Positions 259-45,494 of a DNA stretch of 64,000 nt are shown here, piece by piece (position 1 is the stretch's first letter; each line of letters starts with the position of its first letter). A program made the position numbers and the translations under genes. The notes beneath the pieces were generated by a model. The model had not been told where the DNA came from. It saw only the letters and a list, made by a program, of their open reading frames with translations, and made no database searches. The stretch is from Vitrella brassicaformis CCMP3155 (Eukaryota > Protista > Chromerida): assembly GCA_001179505.1 (NCBI GenBank), contig CDMY01000447.1:1-64000 (forward strand). The letters are read 5' to 3'.

Positions 259-2777
259 ATGGGAGCCAGCGGCTCGAAGACCTCTCGACGAGTCAAAGGA
301 GGAGGGAAGAGAGTCGCCTCCGAACTGTGCCCCGGTCCATGGCCGCGCAGGAAATCATCCAGCAAGCAGGCGGCCAAAGGACACAGCAAGGGAGGTCGAC
401 GCAGGAGCCGCTCCACTGATCCTGACAAGCCGTCCTCGGAGCGGAACAAGGGCCACTCCCCCCCGTCTGCCTCCACGGGCAGCCCCTTGCCCCGAGCCGA
501 CGATGACATCTCGCCCTCTTCCGCATCCAACCAGGCCGCCCCGACAAGCATGCCCGTCACGAGTACGGGGGAGCCCCCCGCATCCCAATCAGACGGCGGC
601 GGCACGGATGAAGGGCCAGGCCCTGAGCCGGTGCTCACGACCCCTCCCCTCTACCCCCTCACGCCCCGCGCCGCCAAGTCGCCGTCCAACACGATGATCC
701 GGCTGGAGTACAGAGACCTGCTCAAAGACCTGCGGGGCACTTTCAGCGAGCTGAAGCGGCAGTGCGGCGAATGGTGGTTCCGTCTCAAGGAGGAGCTGGA
801 CCTGCAGACGGCCGTTTGGCAGAGTGAGGGAGGGGAGGGCGACGGCAAGGAGGGGAGGGAGACCATCCAGAAGGTCATCATCGAGGCGGCGCAGAGCGGC
901 GCCATGTACCAGCTGCTGACTGCGCTGGAGGAGGGCAGGGACAAGGGTGTCGACATCATGGGCTCCCTCAGGGAGACGGCCGAGGCGCTCTCGCGCACGG
1001 AGGAGTCGCTGGTGGTGCACCAGGAGCTGCTCATGGCCATTGCACAAGCTGATCGGGTGCAGCTCGATATGTGGATCGAACACGCAGCGGCTATCAACAT
1101 GAAGGTGAGCGACAATCCCTCCCTCTATGGACGCCACATACACAGCACATGCGCAATATCGAACCTCTCTTTGTCCGTGGTGTCTTGCAGCTGGACCCTC
1201 GGGTGTTCGATCTCGCCGATCGCCTTCACGCCGAGGAGACCGAAGCGCTCAACCGCCTGGACAACAGGCAGAAAGAGGTGCGAGCGCAAGAGAAGCTCAC
1301 CTTCGCCGTCGAAACGCGCGACCCAGAGATCCTGATGTCGGCCATCGGCGACGCCATCGCGTGTGAGCTGGACGTCAAGGACGCCGAGAAGGTGCTGCAG
1401 GAGGTCATCGAGGAGCTGCAGAAGATCCGCGAGATACGCAGGAAGCACCAGCAGAGCCGACCCCGAGCCTCCCGCCCATCGTTGAGCGAGGGGCAGCGGA
1501 AGCAGCCCCCTGCCGCCCCCACTGCTGCTTCTACGGCTGCTGCTGGTGGTGGTGGACCTGCGGGACCCACCGCGCCTCCCCCTCTCAGACCCACACAGCC
1601 AGCAGGGAGGGGGGACTCGGCTGGCGAAGGTGAGGCTCCATTCAACTGGCAGAAGCGGCCGACGTCATACGCCTTCAACCGTGCTGCCACAGCCGATGGC
1701 GGATGGGTACACAATGTGCGAGCGTCCACCAACCAGCAGAGGCAGGACAGGCCGAGAGAACAACCTCAAAGGGAGACCAGCAGGCCGCCCCCGTCCAAGC
1801 CACAGCAGCAGGCAGCCAAGGCAAAGGGCGGTGGTCGGGGCGGCGGCCAGAAGGAGAGGTGGTTCACCGAGCCAAGGGAATGGGAACAGGAGGCGCAGCG
1901 TCGCTTCAGAACCCCCCCGCCACGACCGCGTGCGCCCCCACCGATCCACCGTGCCGCATCGGCCGAGGAAATCTCCCCCACCCGTCGCTTCTACGACTCG
2001 GAGACCACATCGTCGGACCTCTCATCGGATTTGCCCAGCCGCCGGAGGCAGCGCGGCCCTCAGCGCAGCCGCCGCCCACGGGACACGAGCAGCTCCAGCG
2101 GTGCCAGCCATCGGGCGGCGAGGAAGCCCTACCCACAGACCAAGAAACCCAACTACTACACGTCACCGGCCTACCAGAACCAGCAGAGGGGCCAGGGGCT
2201 GCCGAAAGGCAGGGGGCCCTCCATGGCTGGTGGTGGAACAGGTGGTGGTGGAGGTGGGAGGGGGAGGGGGCCGTCGGGAGGAGCGCCTTCTGCGTCAGCG
2301 AGGGCTGGGAGTGGCAGTGCTGCCAGGGGGCGGGAGCATGTGCCTGGCCGAGGGGGCTCGAGGCCGACTCACCCCTCGCAGCCATCATCACAGCAGTCAC
2401 ACAGGTGGGTGGGACAAAGCAAGAGGAGAGCGAGTGGGACGTTGACCGGATGCCTTTGGGGGTACTGTGTATGCAGGCAGGGAGCCGTTGCGGCGAAGAG
2501 GCAGTGGGCCCTGCCTGTTGAGCATCTGAGAGTGCTGGACCTGCCAACCACGGCAATACCATCGCAGGCCCAACTAAAGGTGCTAAGTGGCGTGACACAG
2601 AGCACCTGCCCAACACTGCAGCGACGTGCGTACGTCTCGCAGGCTGCGTATCGTCAGGCGGCGTTGCGGTGGCATCCCGACCGTCGGCAGAACCACACAC
2701 AGCAGGACAAGGCCACCGACATGTTCCAGAAGGTGCGGGAGGCATTTGACATGCTCATGCCCATGGCCAGCCCCTGA
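259..2777 (+). CDS. J-domain (DnaJ type III-like) protein with N-terminal myristoylation-like motif, coiled-coil region, long disordered R/G/P-rich linker and C-terminal J domain; 3 exons (259-1104, 1191-2404, 2477-2777)
   Basis: C-terminus reads AYRQAALRWHPDRRQNHTQQDKATDMFQKVREAFDML (HPD motif). Starts MGASGS. GT-AG intron 1105-1190 (AAG|gtgagc ... ttgcag|CTG) joins ORF 259..1335 to ORF 1071..2777 in frame. Intron 2405-2476 (72 nt) is frame-neutral and therefore less certain. Confidence 0.85.
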
Positions 2778-3469: not shown

Positions 3470-4081
3470 TCACTGCACAGCGGCATGGAGCCTCATGGCG
3501 GACTCCAAGTCCAGCGCCCCATCTGGGCGGCCCTCGGTGACCTCGGGCGTCAAGTCACAGCTCACGTAGATGGGCTCGCCAAAACGGCTCACTGAAGGAC
3601 AAACACACAAACACAGCGGCAAAAATGTGTGAGGCGTGAGTGGCTGTGAACGGGAGTGTACATGTGTGTGCGGACCGAGGAACTTGGCGACCAGCTCGCC
3701 ATAGGCCCCATGACGCATGTACTGGTGCAGCTGCCGACCCGTTCAGACGAACTGCGGCTCCCATTCACAGCACTCTCCTGCGCCACCCCACGTCAAGCCA
3801 CACAGACAGAGCAAACAGAGGAAGAGGGTTCATAAATCGTTGCTGCATTCATTCGTCCCTCCCGTACCTGTGTGGGCAGGTGTGAGGGGAATGCGACGTG
3901 CATGCTCTCGAGGACATGATTCGGCACGGTGTCGCCCACCCACAGGAACACGCTGCTTGACAGCCGAATGCCCAGGAAGGCCACGGGACGGTCGAGGATC
4001 TTCTTGGAACCACGATAGATGAGCTGGCAGCGGCGACGAGTCGGATGAGCTGGCAGCGGCGGCGCTTGTCGACGATTCCAT
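3470..4081 (-). pseudogene. PSMG4: Proteasome assembly chaperone 4 (PAC4/PSMG4)-like gene with two apparent frameshifts; exons 4081-3868, 3777-3676, 3591-3470 (a further 3' exon is possible)
   Basis: Spliced pieces read KKILDRPVAFLGIRLSSSVFLWVGDTVPNHVLESMHVAFPSHLPTQ / ESAVNGSRSSSERVGSCTSTCVMG / AYGELVAKFLVSRFGEPIYVSCDL. These match the PAC4 hallmarks FLWVG, STxxxG and GLAQRL...VFVSYNL recalled from human PSMG4. The ATG at 4081 is out of frame with the FLWVG segment (shift near 4000-4007). A second shift lies at the CCCC run, 3706-3709. Confidence 0.72.
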
Positions 4082-4331
4082 ATCGTGCACTGCAGAATCT
4101 GATGGAGCTCAGCGGCGCAAAGATCTCGTCTTTTCAGCTCAAAGATCTGATCGTTGTGATGATCTGCGGTACTTGCAGGGCGTAGATGCTTGGATGGGTT
4201 GAGATCTCAGCGCGAGCTGAGAGCGCAAGCTGAGCTCGCAAAGGGAGAGAGGGAGGGCGGAAGGGGCAGAACGCGTCGCGTTACGGCCGCCTAGAGCCCG
4301 GCTCCGTCATTGCTGCTCAGAAGGACTCACA
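4082..4331. promoter_or_regulatory. Probable bidirectional promoter/5'UTR spacer between the PAC4-like gene (-) and the TMD0-PX gene (+)
   Basis: Divergent ATGs at 4081 and 4332, 250 bp apart. No microsatellites. Three AGATCT hexamers (4121, 4143, 4202). Confidence 0.45.
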
Positions 4332-7300
4332 ATGAACAGACCTGTTGAGGGCTGGTGCGGCCCGAATGGGCTGGTAAGATGGCGTGGCTGCAGGACCATC
4401 ACGCTCCACCAGAAGCACAACGATGGCGTGTTTGTGTCTTTTCTTGTCAGATCTCCCATGGATATGTCACCGACTGCTTTATCGAAAGGTCAGCCGCATG
4501 ACTGACTGATGGCAGGCACGGCAGTGAAGGAGAGGCAATCAGGCGGGCAAGGAATGTGAGTGTATCTCCGCTGTGTGTCGGTGTCGGTATCGCTGCAGCT
4601 GCATCGCGTTGTGGTATTTGTTGAGTCTGGTACTGTTTGTGGTTCGGTGGTTTGAGCTGCACACATCAGCCATCTCCAGCCCGCCAGACAGGTACGCACC
4701 CGAGGCAGTCGGTCAGCCAGCTGAGCTGCCTGTGCGCGCGTGGATCAAGTCAAGTTGGTGGATGGATGCATCGGCAGGTCGCCGGTCCACGTGGCCAAGA
4801 AGACCTTCTGCGGGCTCATGTGCGGCCTCTCTGCGGTAAGTATGTGCGGTGGGATGTGGCCGGCCGGCCGGCACGTGACGTGTATGTGCTGCCCTGGCTT
4901 TGTGTGTTTTGTGTGTATAGGTGTTGGCCCTGCTGTCGTGGTTCAAGCCGGCCTCCCCACCATATATCCAATTCTCCTGGACACTCCACCTCGTCCTATG
5001 GGTGGGGGCAGACAGACAGACAGACAGACAGGAATGCATGCGTGTGTCTGTTCTGTGCACTTGTCTCTACCTCTGTGTGCTGTCAGGGTTTTTCCTTGGT
5101 GCTCTGCACAATGGAGTATCAGCGGTTCCTGCCGCAGTCGTGGCTGGGGCTGCGCGGATTCTGGCTGGTGGGCGGGGTGGAGGGCATCTGGCGGGCGGGC
5201 ATCTTCGTCCTGGCCTTCACCGTCGGCCTCATGCCGCCCGGCTGGGCCATCCCGCGGGCATCCGACCCCTTCCCGGAGCTGCCCGTCAGGTCGTCACTCT
5301 TCCTCTGGACGGCCTGCATCATCCTCCTCACATCCATCTGCGAGGTACGTGGGGTGGGGCTGGGCGGAGTGTGGGTGGGTAGGTGAGGATGGATCATCAA
5401 TCGACGTGATCTGTCTGTCTGTCCGCCTGGCTCTCTACAGATAGTGCTGGCGTGTCTGTCCTTCTACCAGCCTGCGGACATCCCTTTGGCCCTGCTGCCC
5501 CTCATCACACGACTCAACCGCGGCGAACCCACCGTCCTGCTGCCAAGAGTGCCCGACCTGCTCGACCGAGTCACCGTCGACCACCCAGGGGCAGTGCGAT
5601 ACGGCGGTGCTGACCAGACATCGTTGCCGCCGCAAGCTGTGGATGTCTTTGCTAAGGGGGATGCTGAGGGTGTTTTTGGTGGTGGTTGTGGTGGTGGTGG
5701 AGGTGGTGGTGGAGGTGGCAGTGGCGGCGAGAGGTTGCCGCTAAAGCTGCATGTGGCCCTGTCGAATGTGGTGCTGCAGACGGACCCGGTGCAGCATCGA
5801 ATACATGCCGAGTGAGTGAATGGTGGGCGGGGGAGGAGACGGGGCATTGGCATAGGTGTATGTGTGTTTGGTTGGTGGTGGTTGGTGTAGGTACAAGATG
5901 CTGCTTCGACTGGAGGGCGAGCAGCGGCCGAGAGTGTCCTTCAAACGGTCAGCCAAGCACACACACGCATGGACAGAAGGAGCAGAGCTGATTGTTGCGT
6001 CTGTCTGTGTCCATGTGTGTGTATGTTGTGTAGGTATGCTGACTTCGCGGCGTTGAACAGCGTGTTCCAGTCGCAGTTCAACCGCGACCGCTACCCCGAG
6101 CTGTACGCCAGACTGCCGCACCTGCCGCCAAAGGAACCTTTCAGACAGGTAGGCCCACGCCTTCCGCATTCCGTTGGGTTTGATCTGGTCATATCATATG
6201 TGTGTGTGTGTGTCCCTGTCTGTGCTGTGCAGGAAACACTGAGCCCGGCATTTCTCGACCAGCGGCGACGAGGGCTCGAGGCGTACATTCGGGTGAAAGC
6301 GGGAGAGAAACCAGCTGTGCACCATTGTCTGTGAGTGAATGGGGTCGTTTCTTAATTTGTATGTTTGTTCAGGTGATAGTGCAGCAGGAGGCCTTCTGGC
6401 TGCCGGAGCTGCTCAACTTCCTGGGGCTCAGTGTCATCGAGCAGCGGCCATTCACCGAAGCGCACAAGGAGGCCATCAAACGGTCAGCAAGCCACTCCAC
6501 TCAGCCAGCACCACACCAACACACACACATACACACACGTGCTGCAGGTTTGAGCCCGACAACCCCCTTCGGCTGCGGAAGCCCTCTGACGAGACCTACT
6601 CAGAGGCTGCGTCAATCGACGTGGCCCAGGACGATATCCCATCGCCACTCGAGAGAGAGAGGGAGGGCAGTCCCCCCCGCCACACAGCAGCAGCAGCGGC
6701 ACCATCGGCTGCTGCTGCAGCAGCGGCCGAGGAGCAGATGCTGATGCAGCCCGACCAACAAATCGTCTTGACGTCCTCTGCGCAGCTGTCGTCGTCTGCG
6801 TACTCCCATGCACACGAGGGAGAGAAGGGCGGCGTGGGTGTGGGTGTTGGTGGGGGAGTGGGTGTGGGTTACAGTGTGGAGGGGCCTGGCGGGCCGATTC
6901 CTGTGCGTGTGAGCATCGACCGCTACAAGCTGGTGCAGGAGGGGACGCCTGGGGTGGTGCCGTATGTCATATACGAGGTGGTCACGAGCACCATGCACCG
7001 GACATCCACCGTCGTCAAGAGATACCGGTGAGGTGCGAATGGGTGTGTGCGTAGCTAAGAGCAGAGGAGACACACGGGCGGCGGTGTTGTGAGATCGTCT
7101 CTCTATCTTTCTTTGTGTGTGTGTGTGTGTGTGTCTGTGTGTGTGTGCAGTGAGTTCGACATCTTGTTCAAGAAGCTGCATCGCATTTTGGAGGTGTCGC
7201 CGCCCAAGCTGCCCGGCAAGTTCTACACCATGAAGCGCGACCACTGGTTCTACGAGAAACGAAAAGCTGACCTGACCGACTGGCTCAACCAGGTCTTTCA

Positions 7301-8729
7301 GACACCCCCTCCCCTCCCCCTCGCCCCCTCCCTCTTGACACGCATCGACGCCTCTCTGTCTGTCTGTCGGTCTGTCTGTCTGTCTGTCGGTCTGTCTGTC
7401 TGTCTGTCTGTATGTGTGTTGGTGCATATCTACAGGTGGTGCAGGACGCCGCGTGTGCCTCGTGTCCTGACTTGTGGGAGTTCCTGCAGATCCCCATGAA
7501 TGAGGTCCCACGGCCAACGGCCTCCTCACCGAGCGGCGACACACACGCATGGGCGCGGAAGGCCTCGTCGGGCAGCGAGTCGATCTCTCTGCCAAGGTGG
7601 GTGGGTTGGTGGGCCTGCGGGAGGGAAGGAGGCAACGCACACAAGACACATAGGTACACAATGGGGGCTGGTGTCTGTATGTGTGTGGGGGGGGTTTGGT
7701 GTCAGTATGGCGATGGAGTCGGAGGGCGCCGCTGAAATGTCCCGCCGGGTGCAGCAGCCGGGCACTGCCGATGTGTTAGGTGAGTGGACCTCTCTCTCTG
7801 TGTGTGTGTGCGGCTGTCTGTGCGAGCATCAGCGAGGTCGTGTGAGTGTCCGTGTGATGTCTGTGTGATTGATATACTAGAGCGCACAACCACCGCCCGT
7901 CCTTCGTTCCTCACAGCTGAGCCCAAGAGCGCGCCATCGCCCCCGCTGCTTTCTCGGCCACCTGGCAGCTCTACAGAGCCAGTGCAGGAGTGGCACGTAA
8001 GGCTTATGTGATGGAGGGATGGATGGGATGCATGGGCACCCACACCGACAGTGGTCATGTTGGCTGTGTGGTGTGTGATGGTGTGCAGGTGCGTTGCCGG
8101 ATGTGGCAGACGGTGACGGTGCATCAGGAGAAGGACACTGCGTACGCCCTGCAGCTGTACCGGTGCAAGCCCACCGGCGTCAAGACATGGGCCATCGAGC
8201 GACCCTACAGACGATTCGAGGTCGGTTCGCCCGTCTGTTTGTCTGTCTGTGTGTCTATGGTGTGTGTGGTGCGTGTGTGGTGTGGTGTGTATGTCAGGAG
8301 TTGCACTGGGAGCTGGCCAAGAAGTTCTCGTCCCCGGCCACGGGCATGTCCCTCCTGCCGCCCTTCCCACAGAGGGGCTTCACCCTACTCGCCACACGAG
8401 CAGCACGTAAGCCAAGCCAAGCACTCCTTCCCTCCCCCCCCACACACACCCTCTCTGCCCATCCCATGTGCACCACAGAGGACCGAGAGAAGGAGGAGCG
8501 GGGCCGTCGTCTGGAGGCGTATCTGACGGCCATCCTCCAGTCGTACGAGACGTTCAAGTGTCCCGCACTGGACCTGTTCCTGGCGGAGCCGATGCAGCAC
8601 GCCACCGTGGCCGAGGGGAACGAGCAGCAGGAGGCCGGGGTGAGCAGCTTCGCCATGACGGAGGAGCAGCAGCAGCAGCAGCAGACAGGGGAGGGTGAGG
8701 GTGAGGGTGAGGGTGAGGGGCGGGGGTGA
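4332..8729 (+). CDS. Multi-pass membrane protein: ABCC/ABCB6 TMD0-like N-terminal domain followed by three PX (phox) domains; about 20 exons
   Basis: All junctions traced as phase-compatible GT-AG. The N-terminus has about 5 hydrophobic helices, with motifs WCG...TDCF and MEYQRFLPQSWLGLRGFWLV resembling ABCC TMD0 (FCG...TxCF; LERRKGVQSSGIMLTFWLV). PX1: YKMLL..KRYADFAAL..LPHLPPK..LDQRRRGLEAYI..LNFL (~5890-6430). PX2: YVIYEV..KRYREFDILFKKL..PKLPGK..EKRKADLTDWL..WEFL (~6900-7490). PX3: ERPYRRFEELHWEL..LPPFPQR..ERGRRLEAYL..LDLFL (~8090-8590). Confidence 0.82.
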
Positions 8730-9069
8730 TGATGCGAGCCGTAGACAGAGAGGTAGGTAGACAGAGAGTGTGGTAGGAAGACTCTAGTTGGTGGATGGGA
8801 TATATGGGCTTTGTGGTGAGGGAGGGGAGGTGGATGTCTGCCTGTCTGCCTGTTTTTCGTGCGTGTGTCTATGCTATGGGCCGAGGTTGTGTGTGCCATG
8901 CCATGCCGTTGGTTGGTGTGTGTATCTGTGGACACGAAGAACAAACGGAAGGAAAGCAGCTTAGCTTCACCGTCAAGAACGCATACGTACGTGTACACAG
9001 AAAGGGTTCGTCGGTGAGTGACAACATGGACACATCACATCAATGCATCGTACGCACGTCATGTCTGCA

Positions 9070-10924
9070 TCATGTGCATTGCATACGGTAGCTACGTCTG
9101 GCCTCCCGATTCCATCCTCCATCCATCCGTCCACCACCCACCCCACCGACCAGTGTCGCAGTCGACCAACCTGCATGCAGCCTAGCTGTCCTCCAGCCTC
9201 TTCTCTTGGCCTCCCTCTCCCCACCCTCACCTGACACATTGAGGCAGACATCACAGCCATGACGCACCGAAGGAATGCATGTGTGTCGCTCTGATCTGAT
9301 TCATCCCCTGCCCCCATCTCACCCTCTTCATCCTCCTCCTGCTGCTGGCCATCGCCGTCGCCGTCGCCGTCGATGTCGCCCTCCATATCTGCACACCCAA
9401 GACACGCAAACATACAAATGGGCACACACACACACACACACGTATTCCACTCACCCTCATCGCTGTCGCCGTCATCCGCACCGTCATCATCATCCTCTGC
9501 ACACACACATACACACACACGAGTAAGACACCTAGCAAGGCGGGCTGGACACTACACAGACCACTTACCCTCACCACCATCGCCATCGTCGTCATCCGCC
9601 CCCTCCTCTGCACCACCACACACACGCCGATTCATCCCACCGACATACCGAGATGGAGGCGGCTGGCTGCACACTCACCCTCAGCGACTTTCTCTTGCTG
9701 GTTGACCACCATGTCTGCAATGGTGCTGCCCAGGGGGCCGCCCACCAGAGAGACGGTAGAGGGCCGGCGGTCCTTGAAGGCAGCCGATGCATCACCCACT
9801 GGCGGCTCGGTGGTGATGGCAGAAACACCCACTGCATTCAGCGACACAGCACACGTCAAAGGATGGCTCCATCACCAAAGGATCTCTGACCCCTTTCTTA
9901 CCCATGGTCGTGTCGGCACGGGTGATGAGAGTGACAAATGCGACGAATGGGCCATCGAAGTGCGTCAGCAGCAGAACCCGAAGCTCTTCAGGGGGATTCC
10001 TATTGTCCAACCTGTAAGCCATGACGGCGGTGCATCCGTGAGGCGGCTGGTGGGGCGACTGGGTCAGGAGGCCGTCCAGCACACCGCCGTGGGCATGCCT
10101 GAGGAGACCAACACATGACACAGAAGAGGCCCTGATGGATCGATGGATGTGTGCGCCTGAGTGAGGCGTGTCCTGCGTACCGGTCCACGTAAACCCAAGG
10201 CGTCATGCCCAAATTGGCCGCTGAAGAGTCCAGGATGACCCCCATGATGAAGGATGACGCCGACGCATCAGTGGTCTCGTCACCACCGGCCGTCCAGCTG
10301 CCCCCCTGCCGGCCGATTGTGGATCTGACGGGGGGGTTGTCGTTGATGGTGTGTGGGTGGAATGGATGGGCGGGGGGGAGGGGCGGGTCGATGCCCAGCT
10401 CGAAGCCCGGCTCGTCCTTGATGGCACGCACACCGCCGCCCGCCTGGTCGAACAGCTCAAAACGGCCGTAGTCACCGCCGAAGTTGACGTGTCGGCCGAC
10501 CATCTTCCACAGCGCAATCACACGCACATCGGCCAAATACGCCTACACAGACACCACACACAGACAGACAGACAGACAGACAGACAGACCGATGAGTGCC
10601 CCCCCCCCGCCCCACCCTCATCTGCCCACCTGTTTGCTATCGTGACGCTGCATGTCGGCCACAGCCACTGTGATGGGCAGCTGGCAGAAGCCTTTCGGCG
10701 CCGCCACCTTCAGCGCATTGGCCACCTCGGACCACTGCTGTGTGTCCACCAGCCAGATGGCCTTCAGCAGCAGAGGCCGGTCCAGCTGAGCGTCGAATGC
10801 GATGATGGTCTGCAGTCCCTTGGCCCCCAGGCAGCGATTGAGTCGGTTGCTCAGGACGGCGGCCGAGAAGTCGACTTCCAAGAGGAAACCGGCCGTGACT
10901 CTGAGGCTGCCGACCTCCGACCGG
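9070..10924 (-). CDS. Orphan multigene-family protein, copy A (5' part lost in the N gap); acidic low-complexity tail built from small exons
   Basis: Spliced frame reads EVDFSAAVLSNRLNRCLGAKGLQTIIAFDAQLDRPLLLKAIWLVDTQQW...AYLADVRVIALWKMVGRHVNFGGDYGRFELFDQAGGGVRAIKDEPGFELGIDPPLPPAHPF...HAHGGVLDGLLTQSPHQPPHGCTAV...VGVSAITTEPPVG. It is closely similar to copy B at 43639-45494, including intron positions. The 3' end is uncertain. Confidence 0.7.
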
Positions 10925-10945
10925 CTGCACACATACACAGATCCC

Positions 10946-11245
10946 NNNNNNNNNNNNNNNNNNNNNNNNNNNNNNNNNNNNNNNNNNNNNNNNNNNNNNN
11001 NNNNNNNNNNNNNNNNNNNNNNNNNNNNNNNNNNNNNNNNNNNNNNNNNNNNNNNNNNNNNNNNNNNNNNNNNNNNNNNNNNNNNNNNNNNNNNNNNNNN
11101 NNNNNNNNNNNNNNNNNNNNNNNNNNNNNNNNNNNNNNNNNNNNNNNNNNNNNNNNNNNNNNNNNNNNNNNNNNNNNNNNNNNNNNNNNNNNNNNNNNNN
11201 NNNNNNNNNNNNNNNNNNNNNNNNNNNNNNNNNNNNNNNNNNNNN
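10946..11245. other. Assembly gap (300 N)
   Basis: Run of N, followed by a poly-C tract. Confidence 0.99.
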
Positions 11246-11733
11246 CCCCCCCCCCCCCCCACACACACACACTCAGCTGTCAACTGCCGCTCGCCCTCCC
11301 TCATTGATTCGTGTGTGGTTTGCATACGTGTGGAGGGCATCTCTGTCGTTCTTGTGGAGGAAGTCGAGTGTGTGTTCGTCGATAACGGCACCATGGCGGT
11401 TCGCAGTGTGGTTGTTGCCCATCTCGCCCTCTACGCTCCTGCCGGACGGATCAACTCCACACTCATGCCAATGCTATGGATGAAATCGATGGCTTCGATT
11501 GTCGAACACCGCAGGAGGCCACTGCCGACTGCGCACGACCGCACGACCTTCTCGTTGATCCCAGGAAAAATGCGAGCTGCGACCGGGCGAGTTGCGAGCC
11601 GGAGGAAGGAAAACTGCGTGTGGCAGCAAATCGGGACATTCGAACCCCCCGTGCAGCTGTGGTCGTTGCCCTCGCCCGAAACACAGATCGCATTCACTCT
11701 CTCGCGTCGTCGCGTAGCCCTCGTCCCTCTGTG

Positions 11734-43638: not shown

Positions 43639-45494
43639 TCAACAGCCGCCGTGCCATCTAGCTGTCCTCCAGCCTCCTTCTCTTGGCCTCTCCACACCCT
43701 CACCTGACACAGCACAGATAGCCATGACCCACACAAGGAATGCACGTGTGTCGCTCTGATCTGGCTTATCCCCTGCCCCCATCTCACCCTCCTGCTGCTG
43801 CTGCTGGCCATCGCCGTTGCCCTCGCCATCGCCCTCTCCGTCGATGTCGCCCTCCATGTCTGCACACCCAAGACACGCAAAGATACAAGTGGGGGGCCCA
43901 ACCACACACACACACACACACACATGTATCCCACTCACCCTCATCGCTGTCGCCGTCTTCCGCACCCTCATCATCATCCTCTGCACACACACACACACAT
44001 CCGAGTAAGACACCTAGCAAGGCGGGCTGGGGGCCACGCACCACTTACCCTCACCACTATCGCCATCGTCGTCATCCGCACTCTCCTCTGCGCACCACCA
44101 CACACACGCCGATTCATCCAACCGACACATCGAGGTGGCCAAGGCGGCCGGCTGCACACTCACCCTCATCAGCGACTTCCTGTTGGTTGACCACCATGTC
44201 TGCGATGGGCTGCCCCACCAGGCCGCCCACCAGAGGGACGGTAGCGGGCCGGCGGTCCTTGAAGGCAGCCGATGCATCACCCACTGGCGGCTCGGTGGTG
44301 ACGACAGCCACACCCACTGCATTCAGCAGAACAACACACGTCAAAGGATGGCTCCATCACCAAAGCATCTCTGATTCCTCACCTGTGTCCATGTTGGCCT
44401 GAGTGGCGAGAGCGATGTACGCGACGAATGGGCCATCGAACGGCGTCAGCAGCAGCTGCCGAAGCTCTCCAGGGGGATCCCTGCCGTCACCTCTGCCCGC
44501 CACGACGGCGGTGCATCGGTTGGGGGGCTGATGGGGCGAGTGGTTGAGGAGGCCGATCAGCACACCGCCGTGGGCATGACTGAGGAGACCAACACATAAC
44601 AGAGGGAAGAGGCCCTAATGGATGTGTGTGTGCCTGCGTGTGGTGTGTCCTGCCTACCGGTCCACGTCAACCCAAGGCGTCCACCCCCTATTGGCCACTC
44701 CAGGGGTCATAATGATCCTCATGATGAAGGAGGACGCCGAGGCCTCAGTGATCACCCCATCACCCCCCATCATCGGGCGGAGTCGGTATGGGAGTCGGTC
44801 TCTGACGGGGGGATTGTCGTTGATGGTGTGTGTGTGGTATGGGTGGGCGGGGGGGAGGGGCGGGTTGATGTCCAGCTCAAAGCCCGGCTCGTCCTTGATG
44901 GCACGCACACCGCCGCCCGCCTGGTCGAACAGCTCAAAACGGCCCAACTGGCCGCCGAAGTTGACGTGTCTGCCGACCATCTTCCACAGCGCCAAAACAC
45001 GCGGCTCAGCCAAATACGCCTGCAACAACAGACACACAACACAGCTATCGAGCCATCCATCCCTCCTCGCCTGTCCCCTCCGTCCCGCCCACCTGTTTGG
45101 TGGTGTGCCTCTGCATGTCCTGCACACTCATGGTGACCGGCAGAGTGCAGAAGCCGCGCTGCACCGCCAACTTCAGCGCGTTCCCCGCCTCGGTCCACTG
45201 CTGCGTATCCACCAGCCAGATGGCCTTCAGCAGCAGAGGGCTCTCCAGCTGAGTGTCGAATGCGATAATGCCGTCGAGCTGTTTGGCCGCCAGGCAGCGC
45301 CCCAGCCGATTGCGGAGGACGGCGGCCGAGAAGTCGATCTGCCTGAGGAATGTCGCTGTGCATCTGAGGATGCCGACCTCCTTGTGTTCGTGGATGGCAT
45401 CTCGCTCCTCGCGATGGATGAAATCTATCGATTCGTTGCCTCTTGCCGGCGGGATGGGCTGCCGGCTGCTGGGTACTGTCACCTCATTTCCCAT
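43639..45494 (-). CDS. Orphan multigene-family protein, copy B (paralogue of 9070-10924)
   Basis: MGNEVT...RQIDFSAAVLRNRLGRCLAAKQLDGIIAFDTQLESPLLLKAIWLVDTQQW...AYLAEPRVLALWKMVGRHVNFGGQLGRFELFDQAGGGVRAIKDEPGFELDINPPLPPAHPY...VGVAVVTTEPPVGDASAAFKDRRP. Exon/intron pattern is the same as copy A and junctions are phase-compatible. Confidence 0.72.

What the first reader, a model, noticed from the sequence alone, without database searches (positions are those of the whole stretch)
4332..8729. TMD0-like membrane domain fused to three tandem PX domains, with no ABC core
Seen: about 5 TM helices with TMD0-like motifs (WCG..TDCF; EYQR..S..LRGFWLV), then three complete PX domains, and no NBD or other catalytic domain. 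Established: TMD0 in ABCC1/SUR/ABCB6/TAPL acts as a trafficking or partner-binding module, and PX domains bind phosphoinositides. TM-anchored sorting nexins such as SNX13/14 have a single PX in a PXA-RGS-PX-PXC layout. Inference: a potentially undescribed integral-membrane sorting nexin or membrane-contact tether; I know of no named protein with this architecture.
Basis: partly seen in the sequence, partly recalled or inferred. Interest (0 to 1): 0.72.

Follow-up and report, generated by a model that had tools for sequence, protein, structure and literature searches.

The report
Orphan TMD0 anchor with three PX domains
This alga has a real gene for a membrane protein that joins the five-helix "TMD0" anchor, otherwise known only from ABC transporters, to three lipid-binding PX domains with no transporter attached, and uncultured protists carry the same layout, which I found in no paper.

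Summary
Observation confirmed. Window 4332-8729 (+) is one 19-exon GT-AG gene of 915 aa. My hand-built model is identical to the deposited Vitrella brassicaformis CCMP3155 protein P0005 ("PX domain-containing protein").

- **PX domains:** Pfam finds three, each above the gathering score. PX1 and PX2 carry the canonical PI3P residues. PX3 does not have the canonical Arg-Tyr.
- **No ABC core:** no NBD motif occurs anywhere in the 64-kb window.
- **N-terminal 200 aa:** five TM helices, with no significant sequence hit to any family. An AlphaFold2 model built only from family members (pLDDT 77) matches the TMD0 of Ycf1, ABCC1, ABCC2, ABCC3 and SUR over its whole length (Z up to 16.4, rmsd 3.0 A, 173 aa). 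The top 48 Foldseek PDB hits are all ABCC proteins. Language-model neighbours are PF24357 and PF16185. The TMD0 N-terminal cysteine pair is conserved.
- **Conservation:** the same layout is one intronless ORF in metagenomic eukaryotes (about 23% identity), so it is not a gene-model fusion.
- **Selection:** against a paralog, exons differ mostly at third codon positions.

Likely role, inferred only: a TMD0-anchored, cytosol-facing, multivalent PI3P reader of the endolysosomal or vacuolar system. I rate it a new variant of a known kind.

The parts
4332..8729 (+). Whole CDS of the TMD0-3xPX gene (19 exons, 915 aa, identical to P0005)
4332..4373 (+). Exon 1 (aa 1-14). Holds the start codon and Cys9 (4356-4358), in the lumenal N-tail.
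   Evidence: Cys9 is conserved in 12 of 13 relatives
4451..4488 (+). Exon 2 (aa 15-27). Holds Cys23 (4475-4477) at the entrance to TM1.
   Evidence: Cys23 is invariant in 14 of 14
4599..4691 (+). Exon 3 (TM1)
4778..4835 (+). Exon 4 (cytosolic loop 1 and start of TM2)
4921..5001 (+). Exon 5 (end of TM2 and start of TM3)
5087..5344 (+). Exon 6 (TM3 end, TM4, most of TM5). Contains the family-invariant motif E114-Y-x-R-x-x-P-x-x-W-x-G-L-R-G-F-W...G134-x-E136 at 5114-5182.
   Evidence: TARA fragments are 60% identical over this motif
5441..5811 (+). Exon 7 (end of TM5 to about 5470, juxtamembrane helix, Gly-rich linker, start of PX1 from about 5768)
5891..5947 (+). Exon 8 (PX1 beta strands)
6034..6148 (+). 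Exon 9 (PX1: R333-Y334 and the LPHLPPK loop)
6233..6292 (+). Exon 10 (PX1 helix 2 with R382)
6373..6482 (+). Exon 11 (end of PX1, to about 6429)
6548..7027 (+). Exon 12 (Ala/Gly-rich linker, then start of PX2 from about 6927, including R586-Y587)
7151..7292 (+). Exon 13 (PX2 core: PKLPGK loop and R625)
   Evidence: this exon alone matches PF00787 at E = 3.6e-4 and SNX33 PX
7436..7596 (+). Exon 14 (end of PX2 to about 7495, then linker)
7706..7779 (+). Exon 15 (linker)
7881..7996 (+). Exon 16 (linker)
8089..8220 (+). Exon 17 (start of PX3, with the atypical R-P-Y-R-R-F junction)
8298..8406 (+). Exon 18 (PX3, LPPFPQR loop)
8479..8729 (+). Exon 19 (end of PX3 to about 8591, acidic/Gln-rich tail, stop codon)

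Best explanation
The gene encodes a polytopic membrane protein. Its first 200 residues or so form a five-helix TMD0-type bundle, the accessory N-terminal domain of long ABCC transporters and ABCB6-type transporters. The N-tail faces the lumen or outside and probably carries a Cys9-Cys23 disulfide. The C-terminus faces the cytosol.

No ABC core follows. Instead the chain continues into three PX domains strung on long flexible linkers. PX1 and PX2 have all four canonical PI3P-binding residues. PX3 is divergent.

Shown here:
- the gene structure;
- the three PX domains;
- the absence of an ABC core;
- the TMD0 fold match;
- conservation of the whole layout in distant relatives;
- purifying selection.

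Inferred:
- The TMD0 acts, as it does in ABCB6, Ycf1, TAP and SUR, as an autonomous membrane anchor, targeting module or partner-binding module.
- The PX domains read PI3P on the cytosolic face of endosomal or vacuolar membranes.
- The protein is therefore a resident, multivalent, integral-membrane PI3P reader, comparable to a sorting nexin, of the endolysosomal system. It could bind lipid in cis, or reach another membrane in trans through its linkers.
- The family-invariant cytosolic patch (EYxRxxPxxWxGLRGFW at the TM3-TM4 turn) is the most likely docking site for a partner or for the protein's own PX1.
For: Gene model:
- 19 GT-AG exons give a model identical to P0005.
- Against the paralogous locus L001, exons are 96.8% identical and introns 89.4%. 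Mismatches fall 13/9/62 at codon positions 1/2/3.

PX domains:
- PF00787 is found three times above threshold.
- PX1 and PX2 hit solved PX domains (CISK/SGK3, SNX16, SNX27, SNX33, SNX11, SNX10), with the RY, PxxPxK and R positions aligned.
- The four-residue PI3P rule is as quoted in PMC8764524.

TMD0:
- The AF2 model from alignment A3 (15 family sequences, no ABC protein, no templates) has pLDDT 77.3 and pTM 0.73.
- The top 48 Foldseek PDB hits are all ABCC proteins that carry a TMD0.
- VIA-align gives Z 16.4, rmsd 3.0 A over 173 aa, model residues 1-201 against Ycf1 residues 5-191. All 50 listed rows are ABCC/SUR proteins; most align to chain residues about 1-215, and about a quarter report a chain range running on to about residue 1200.
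- In the unbiased search of 48,161 chains, AtABCC2 TMD0 is first at Z 13.6.
- In the Atlas shape search, a PF24357 cluster is first with TM 0.63/0.56.
- The nearest protein-language-model neighbours are PF24357 TMD0_ABC and PF16185 MTABC_N, score 0.85 with 175-187 shared features.
- Three relatives give collinear sub-threshold MTABC_N hits, best E = 0.0017.
- A conserved Cys pair sits in the N-tail and at the TM1 entrance, matching the SUR1 C6-C26 disulfide described in PMC5344670.

Topology:
- The K+R distribution over 14 members indicates N-out, C-in.

Architecture conserved:
- L006:4276-6585 is a single intronless 770-aa ORF with the same layout.
- The nine further metagenomic relatives scanned (P0008-P0011, P0013-P0015, P0017, P0018) show 2-3 detectable PX stretches after the same N-domain; the full-length alignment A2 holds 11 such relatives, of which P0016 and P0019 were not scanned.

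TMD0 as an autonomous targeting unit:
- ABCB6 TMD0 alone goes to lysosomes (PMC4410673).
Against: - There is no significant sequence match of the N-domain to any TMD0 model or to any solved ABC transporter. Pfam, PDB phmmer and PDB hmmsearch all returned nothing. The homology claim therefore rests on fold, embeddings and motifs.
- Otopetrin half-domains score nearly as high in the unbiased structural search: Z 12.2 against 13.6.
- The AF2 alignment is shallow (15 sequences), so the model may lean on learned priors.
- No expression, localisation or lipid-binding data exist.
- PX3 lacks the canonical Arg-Tyr junction and has no PDB sequence hit.
Confidence: 0.6

Rival explanations
1. The N-terminal domain is a generic five-helix membrane bundle that only resembles TMD0 by convergence. 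The protein is then simply a polytopic PX protein with an anchor of independent origin.
For: - No Pfam or PDB sequence hit at E <= 10 for the Vitrella domain or for the family profile.
- The best MTABC_N hit is below the gathering score, 18.4 against 29.1 bits.
- Otopetrin halves reach Z 10.5-12.2 in the unbiased search.
- The tool's own note says helical bundles can reach Z of about 13 by arrangement alone.
Against: - Z reaches 16.4 against individual TMD0 structures, with full-length collinear coverage starting at residue 1.
- Every one of the 48 top Foldseek hits is an ABCC TMD0.
- Independent language-model neighbours are the two TMD0 Pfam families.
- The domain shares the N-terminal position, N-out topology, short N-tail helix and conserved Cys pair at the TM1 entrance.
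Confidence: 0.17
2. The protein is a trans-acting membrane-contact tether. The TMD0 anchors it in one organelle (for example the ER), and the PX domains on long disordered linkers capture PI3P on a second organelle, as SNX13/14/19 or Mdm1 do.
For: - The Vitrella protein has long low-complexity linkers of about 100, 135 and 90 aa between the modules.
- SNX19 is a precedent: it is ER-anchored and its PX tethers endolysosomes (PMC8316374, listed).
Against: - Known TMD0s direct proteins to lysosomal or vacuolar membranes, where PI3P itself resides. That favours cis binding (PMC4410673).
- The linkers are much shorter in the metagenomic relatives (and the A2 alignment).
- There is no PXA, RGS or PXC domain.
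Confidence: 0.2
3. The architecture is an annotation artefact: two adjacent genes (a TM gene or ABCC relic, and a PX gene) merged into one model.
For:
- The deposited model is an Augustus prediction that used RNA-seq intron hints (PMC4501334).
Against: - Intronless single ORFs with the same layout occur in L006 and L009. The other full-length metagenomic relatives (P0008-P0019) are single predicted proteins with the same layout.
- The frame is continuous through 18 canonical introns.
- The third-position substitution bias runs along the whole CDS.
- Sequence conserved across the family spans the TM5-to-PX1 junction.
Confidence: 0.03

Closest known systems
TMD0 of long ABCC transporters (MRP1/ABCC1, ABCC2, ABCC3, Ycf1, AtABCC2, SUR1/SUR2B; Pfam PF24357) and of ABCB6/HMT1-type transporters (PF16185 MTABC_N)
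   Same: - Five-helix bundle at the extreme N-terminus.
- N-out, C-in topology.
- Short helix and a cysteine pair in the N-tail at the TM1 entrance.
- Structural superposition at Z 14-16.4, rmsd about 3 A, over the whole domain.
   Different: - No L0/TMD1/NBD core follows. The domain is fused to PX domains instead.
- No significant sequence similarity.
- It has its own invariant motif, EYxRxxPxxWxGLRGFW, at the TM3-TM4 cytosolic turn.
Transmembrane sorting nexins SNX13/SNX14/SNX19/SNX25 (yeast Mdm1/Nvj3)
   Same: Membrane-anchored proteins with a cytosolic PX domain that reads phosphoinositides. They are a possible model for organelle tethering.
   Different: - Those have one or two N-terminal TM helices, a single PX, and PXA, RGS and PXC domains.
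- This protein has a five-TM TMD0, three PX domains and none of PXA, RGS or PXC.
Plasmodium falciparum PfPX1 (PMC8764524)
   Same: An alveolate polytopic membrane protein with a PI3P-type PX domain, acting at the digestive-vacuole and endosomal pathway.
   Different: - PfPX1 has a single PX at the N-terminus, followed by 4-6 TM helices and a long disordered region.
- It is reported as Plasmodium-specific.
- The domain order is reversed and no TMD0 is described. Direct sequence comparison was not done here.
Soluble PX-only or PX-BAR sorting nexins (SNX3, SNX10/11, SNX33) and SGK3/CISK PX
   Same: These are the best sequence matches of PX1 and PX2, with conserved RY, PxxPxK and R residues.
   Different: They are soluble, carry a single PX, and are recruited peripherally. 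This protein is permanently membrane-embedded and trivalent.

Membership tests
PX domain (Pfam PF00787) | Match to the family HMM above the gathering score | tested here: met
   The three domains scored separately give 38.5, 51.1 and 42.0 bits against a cut-off of 21.6. Exon 13 alone gives 21.5 bits.
PX domain (Pfam PF00787) | Canonical PI3P-binding tetrad: Arg-Tyr at the beta3/alpha1 junction, Lys in the PsiPxxPxK loop, Arg in helix 2 (rule as quoted in PMC8764524) | tested here: met
   - PX1: R333-Y334, LPHLPPK366, R382.
- PX2: R586-Y587, PKLPGK, R625.
- These positions align to solved PX domains.
- PX3 is not canonical: it has an R-P-Y-R-R-F junction and Arg in place of the loop Lys.
PX domain (Pfam PF00787) | Actual phosphoinositide binding | not testable with these tools
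   Needs liposome or PIP-array binding assays with the recombinant domains.
ABC-transporter TMD0 (PF24357 TMD0_ABC / PF16185 MTABC_N) | Five TM helices at the N-terminus with the TMD0 fold | tested here: met
   - AF2 model pLDDT 77.3.
- Z up to 16.4, rmsd 3.0 A, model residues 1-201 against Ycf1 residues 5-191. All 50 listed rows are ABCC/SUR proteins; most align to chain residues about 1-215, and about a quarter report a chain range running on to about residue 1200.
- First in the unbiased PDB search and in the Atlas shape search.
ABC-transporter TMD0 (PF24357 TMD0_ABC / PF16185 MTABC_N) | Match to the family HMM above the gathering score | tested here: not met
   - No Pfam hit for P0005:1-240 at E <= 10.
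- The best hit in a relative (P0015) is MTABC_N at 18.4 bits against 29.1, E = 0.0017.
- I did not verify that PF24357 is in the copy of Pfam that was scanned.
ABC-transporter TMD0 (PF24357 TMD0_ABC / PF16185 MTABC_N) | Conserved cysteine pair (disulfide) in the extracytosolic N-tail at the entrance to TM1 (SUR1 C6-C26, and ABCB6; PMC5344670 citing Fukuda 2011) | tested here: met
   Cys9 is present in 12 of 13 family members and Cys23 in 14 of 14. The bond itself was not tested.
ABC-transporter TMD0 (PF24357 TMD0_ABC / PF16185 MTABC_N) | N-terminus outside, C-terminus cytosolic | tested here: inconclusive
   The positive-inside count over 14 members fits N-out, C-in: K+R of 0.6, 2.6, 0.4, 2.9 and 0.5 in successive segments. 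This is a prediction only.
ABC-transporter TMD0 (PF24357 TMD0_ABC / PF16185 MTABC_N) | Followed by an L0 linker and an ABC core (TMD-NBD) | tested here: not met
   - Only PX domains follow.
- No Walker A, signature or Walker B in the 64-kb window.
- The intronless relatives end after PX3.
SNX13/14/19/25-type transmembrane sorting nexins | PXA, RGS and PXC domains flanking a single PX | tested here: not met
   Pfam reports only PF00787, three times.
PfPX1-type proteins | N-terminal PX followed by TM helices and a long disordered region (PMC8764524) | tested here: not met
   The domain order here is TM first, then PX. Sequence comparison with PfPX1 was not done.

The most novel reading that the evidence does not exclude
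TMD0 is a free-standing, mobile membrane module that exists outside ABC transporters. In this reading the TMD0-3xPX family is its first non-ABC home. It would work like SUR-TMD0 on Kir6 or TAP-TMD0 on tapasin: the invariant cytosolic and intramembrane patch would clamp a still unknown endolysosomal channel, transporter or sorting partner, and the three PX domains would place that partner under PI3P control.
Probability: 0.15. Interest if true: 0.8.

Novelty: new variant of a known kind. Interest (0 to 1): 0.62.

Why it matters
TMD0 has been treated as an accessory of ABC transporters. Its known roles, all defined in that context, are lysosomal or vacuolar targeting and partner binding.

A conserved protein family in which TMD0 is fused to something else would show that it is an autonomous evolutionary module. 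It would also offer a natural minimal system for asking what TMD0 does by itself.

For phosphoinositide biology, this family adds a polytopic, trivalent PX protein to the short list of membrane-embedded PX readers. It occurs in a free-living relative of apicomplexan parasites, whose endolysosomal system gave rise to the invasion organelles.

Tried and rejected
- **RNA evidence.** There is no direct transcript evidence.
- **Exon-wise searches of the spliced model, by reference.**
  - Pfam gave only a borderline PX on exon 13 and a weak one on exon 19.
  - PDB and Atlas searches with exon 6 gave nothing.
  - One search failed because I gave a wrong frame.
- **The joined model.** It was never sent to a search tool. 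It was built only in a script. After the exon 6 HMMER search returned the paralog P0001, the word search found P0005, which is identical to the model, and P0005 was used by reference.
- **First AF2 run.** The 4-row alignment A1 gave pLDDT 41, and I discarded that model.
- **Sequence searches of the N-domain**, all empty:
  - PDB with a single sequence, the A1 profile and the A3 profile;
  - proteins of 503-1601 aa.
- **hhalign against a TMD0 alignment** could not be run, because no ABC TMD0 sequence was available by reference.
- **Conserved upstream neighbour.** A small neighbour gene is conserved in the metagenomic clade. I looked for it next to the Vitrella genes and found none.
- **AT-rich contigs L007 and L008.** PX domains downstream of the TMD0-like core were not found using a family HMM and genetic code 6.
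- **Fukuda 2011 (PMC3048732)** is not held. Its claim is cited through PMC5344670.
Full report
**1. What is in the sequence**

The region is GC-rich eukaryotic DNA with short introns. I built a gene model by hand from GT-AG sites and open frames. It has 19 exons, introns of 65-143 nt, and a CDS of 2748 nt from the ATG at 4332 to the TGA ending at 8729, giving 915 aa.

The joined protein was kept only in a script file and was not sent to any search tool.

The exon 6 HMMER search against 1.84 billion representatives returned four hits:
- P0001, an 870-aa Vitrella brassicaformis CCMP3155 protein (CEM07986.1 / A0A0G4F7L2, "PX domain-containing protein");
- two roughly 55-aa TARA Oceans fragments;
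- a fourth, weak hit (P0004, E 4e-4), a repetitive 533-aa protein I take to be spurious.

A word search with P0001 then returned P0005, a 915-aa protein of the same strain on a 379-kb contig. P0005 is letter-for-letter identical to my model. From then on P0005 was used by reference. This also confirms the organism named in earlier notes of this scan. The deposited models are Augustus predictions that used strand-specific RNA-seq as intron evidence (PMC4501334).

**2. Is it one real gene?**

Two other lines settle the question.

The first is selection. The paralogous locus L001 (CDMY01000382.1) aligns to window 3876-11473 at 86-93% identity, block by block. Inside my model, exons are 96.8% identical and introns 89.4%. 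Exon mismatches fall 13, 9 and 62 at codon positions 1, 2 and 3. That is the signature of purifying selection in exactly this frame along the whole CDS.

The second is conservation of the layout in intronless genomes. A scan of JGI metagenomes with the conserved N-domain motifs found five loci:
- In L006 the homologue is one uninterrupted 770-aa ORF (4276-6588) with the same N-terminal TM domain followed by three PX domains.
- L005 matches P0005 residues 9-410 in a single frame.
- A word search with the L006 protein found 13 further metagenomic relatives, 45-59% identical to the L006 protein, besides P0007, its own shorter gene call. All carry PF00787.
- One of them, P0015, lies as a single ORF on a gene-dense, intron-poor eukaryotic contig between unrelated genes.

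The full-length alignment A2 (14 sequences, about 23% identity between Vitrella and the rest) has invariant columns in the TM domain, in the TM5-to-PX1 junction, and in all three PX domains. A merged-gene artefact is therefore excluded.

**3. The PX domains**

Pfam gives PF00787 three times in P0005 (E = 6.5e-33). Scored separately the domains reach 38.5, 51.1 and 42.0 bits against a gathering score of 21.6.

- PX1 hits solved PX domains of CISK/SGK3, SNX16 and SNX27.
- PX2 hits SNX33, SNX11, SNX10, SGK3 and SNX3.
- PX3 has no PDB sequence hit at E <= 0.01.

I applied the four-residue PI3P rule as quoted in PMC8764524: Arg-Tyr at the beta3/alpha1 junction, Lys in PsiPxxPxK, and Arg in helix 2.
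- PX1 is canonical: R333-Y334, LPHLPPK, R382.
- PX2 is canonical: R586-Y587, PKLPGK, R625.
- PX3 is not. It has an R-P-Y-R-R-F junction and Arg in place of the loop Lys.

No PXA, RGS, PXC, BAR, FERM or kinase domain is present.

**4. No ABC core**

After PX3 the protein ends in an acidic, Gln-rich tail and a stop codon. No Walker A, LSGGQ or Walker B combination occurs in any frame of the 64-kb window. The ORFs downstream to 20 kb show nothing like an ABC transporter. The upstream + strand gene (259-2777) ends in a J domain and is separate.

**5. The N-terminal domain**

Hydropathy gives five hydrophobic segments within aa 20-209 and none after aa 260.

Sequence methods are silent:
- no Pfam hit at E <= 10;
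- no PDB hit with the single sequence or with the A1 or A3 profiles;
- no protein of 503-1601 aa other than the two Vitrella paralogs.

Weak sequence signals do exist. The protein-language-model neighbours of residues 1-235 are clusters carrying PF24357 TMD0_ABC and PF16185 MTABC_N (score 0.85, with 175-187 of 256 features shared). The tool states that this feature range is typical of true family members. Three metagenomic relatives give collinear but sub-threshold MTABC_N hits, the best being P0015 at E = 0.0017 and 18.4 against 29.1 bits.

The decisive test was structural. A first AF2 run on four sequences failed with pLDDT 41. With the 15-sequence alignment A3, which holds family members only, no ABC transporter and no templates, the model reached pLDDT 77.3 and pTM 0.73. 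The TM helices mostly scored 83-95, apart from the start of TM5. The helices are 17-48, 60-85, 91-117, 126-150 and 170-199, plus a short N-tail helix at 4-9.

| Search | Result |
|---|---|
| Foldseek vs PDB | Top 48 hits are all ABCC2, Ycf1, ABCC1, ABCC3, AtABCC2, SUR1 or SUR2B. Best E = 2.2e-3. The 198-aa SUR2B TMD0 chain 7mjq_G gives TM 0.52/0.62. |
| VIA-align on those chains | Z 14-16.4, rmsd 2.7-3.5 A over 152-180 residues. Model 1-201 aligns to Ycf1 5-191, and model 5-202 to ABCC1 3-215. The whole domain is collinear from the N-terminus. |
| Unbiased comparison with 48,161 PDB representatives | AtABCC2 TMD0 first (Z 13.6, model 1-215 against chain 2-202). Otopetrin half-domains follow (Z 10.5-12.2), with SUR1 at Z 10.8. 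|
| ESM Atlas shape search | A PF24357 cluster first (TM 0.63/0.56, 189 aligned), otopetrin second. |

Two further TMD0 hallmarks are present.
- SUR1's TMD0 is described as a five-helix bundle whose extracellular N-tail has a brief helix and a highly conserved C6-C26 disulfide at the entrance to TM1 (PMC5344670). Here Cys9 (12 of 13 members) and Cys23 (14 of 14) occupy the same positions.
- The K+R distribution over the family is 0.6, 2.6, 0.4, 2.9 and 0.5 in successive extramembrane segments. This predicts N-out, C-in and puts the PX domains in the cytosol.

I conclude that the fold is TMD0 (about 0.9) and that common ancestry with ABC TMD0 is likely (about 0.75-0.8). The caveats are the shallow alignment, the lack of a significant sequence match, and the otopetrin runner-up.

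**6. A family signature**

The most conserved part of the family is E114-Y-x-R-x-x-P-x-x-W-x-G-L-R-G-F-W, then G134-x-E136 and R140. It lies at the cytosolic end of TM3, the TM3-TM4 turn and the start of TM4. It is invariant from Vitrella to the metagenomic clade and the TARA fragments. A conserved juxtamembrane helix, P-x-D-L-x-x-x-L-x-x-x-I-x-R-L, follows TM5. This cytosolic patch is the obvious candidate for a docking surface.

**7. How it most likely works (inferred)**

Known TMD0s are independently folding units used for targeting and partner binding. ABCB6 TMD0 alone goes straight to lysosomes (PMC4410673). TAP TMD0s are autonomous interaction scaffolds (PMC3437018). SUR1 TMD0 holds Kir6.2 (PMC5344670). 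PX domains with the canonical tetrad bind PI3P on endosomal and vacuolar membranes.

Both modules point to the endolysosomal or vacuolar system. I therefore favour a resident, TMD0-anchored, multivalent PI3P reader acting mainly in cis, an integral-membrane counterpart of a sorting nexin (about 0.45). A trans tether like SNX13/14/19 is next (about 0.2-0.25). A PI3P-regulated partner-clamping subunit is the more novel option (about 0.15). None of these can be separated with the tools at hand.

**8. Comparison and novelty**

- It is not a member of the SNX13/14/19/25 family, because PXA, RGS and PXC are absent.
- It is not an ABC transporter.

Full-text searches found no paper holding both "TMD0" and "PX domain" and no "three PX domains" protein with a TM anchor. 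The chromerid genome paper does not mention PX domains, sorting nexins or ABC transporters.

The protein itself is in public databases under an automatic name. What is new is the recognition of the TMD0 and of a conserved TMD0-3xPX family.

Limits on the absence claims: the single-exon HMMER query did not even reach the metagenomic clade, and the word searches reach only close relatives. The true range of the family is therefore unknown.

**9. Tools that failed or were closed**

| What happened |
|---|
| Frame error, my slip |
| max_evalue limit |
| Paper not held |

Noticed in passing
L001 10001-14292 (paralog, P0001) against window 4332-8729: The second Vitrella copy (91% protein identity) differs from the window gene by several indels.
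- In-frame deletions: 21 nt in TM3 and 27 nt in the PX1 PPK loop.
- Frame-breaking indels: +1 nt at window 6397, -34 nt at 8329-8362, -5 nt at 8700-8704.

The deposited model skirts the frame-breaking indels. It looks like a decaying duplicate or a poorly assembled copy.
   Followed up: partly
window 9073-10939 and 43658-45381: Both stretches match the gene downstream of the paralog (L001 14818-16567), at 86% and 81.5% identity. That neighbouring gene is therefore present twice within the window.
   Followed up: no
L004 51-545, L005 704-1198, L006 3697-4227, L009 9384-9938: In the metagenomic clade a small 164-184 aa protein with two TM helices sits directly upstream of the TMD0-3xPX gene, on the same strand, in all four contigs. 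No counterpart lies next to either Vitrella gene.
   Followed up: partly
L007 (1546 nt) and L008 (7827 nt): These very AT-rich contigs (GC 19-22%) have TAA/TAG inside otherwise open frames, which suggests a ciliate-like genetic code. They encode the TMD0-like core with the EY.RR...W.GLRGFW motif. No PX domain was detected downstream with a family HMM under genetic code 6.
   Followed up: partly
L002 284-397 and L003 252-365 (TARA Oceans scaffolds): Two marine contigs share a 114-nt exon at 98% identity. It encodes the invariant motif and is 60% identical in protein to Vitrella. The flanks are unrelated, so the exon boundary differs from that in Vitrella. The contigs probably come from uncultured marine relatives.
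   Followed up: partly
model m0ae3056c1ec0 (P0005 aa 14-205): Otopetrin proton-channel half-domains (Otop1 76-283, Otop3, CeOtop8) are the runner-up structural match to this TMD0-type bundle: Z 10.5-12.2 in the PDB search, and second in the Atlas shape search. This may be a fold relationship between TMD0 and otopetrin repeats, or a common helical arrangement.
   Followed up: no
window 6483-6547 and 7028-7150 (introns 11 and 12), and others in the gene: These introns are A+C-rich (CA repeats) after the donor and carry TG repeats running into the acceptor. This matches the Vitrella intron pattern noted elsewhere in this scan.
   Followed up: no
window 259-2777 (+): The upstream gene is a long low-complexity protein ending in a J domain (..ALRWHPDR..). 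It is separate from the finding.
   Followed up: no
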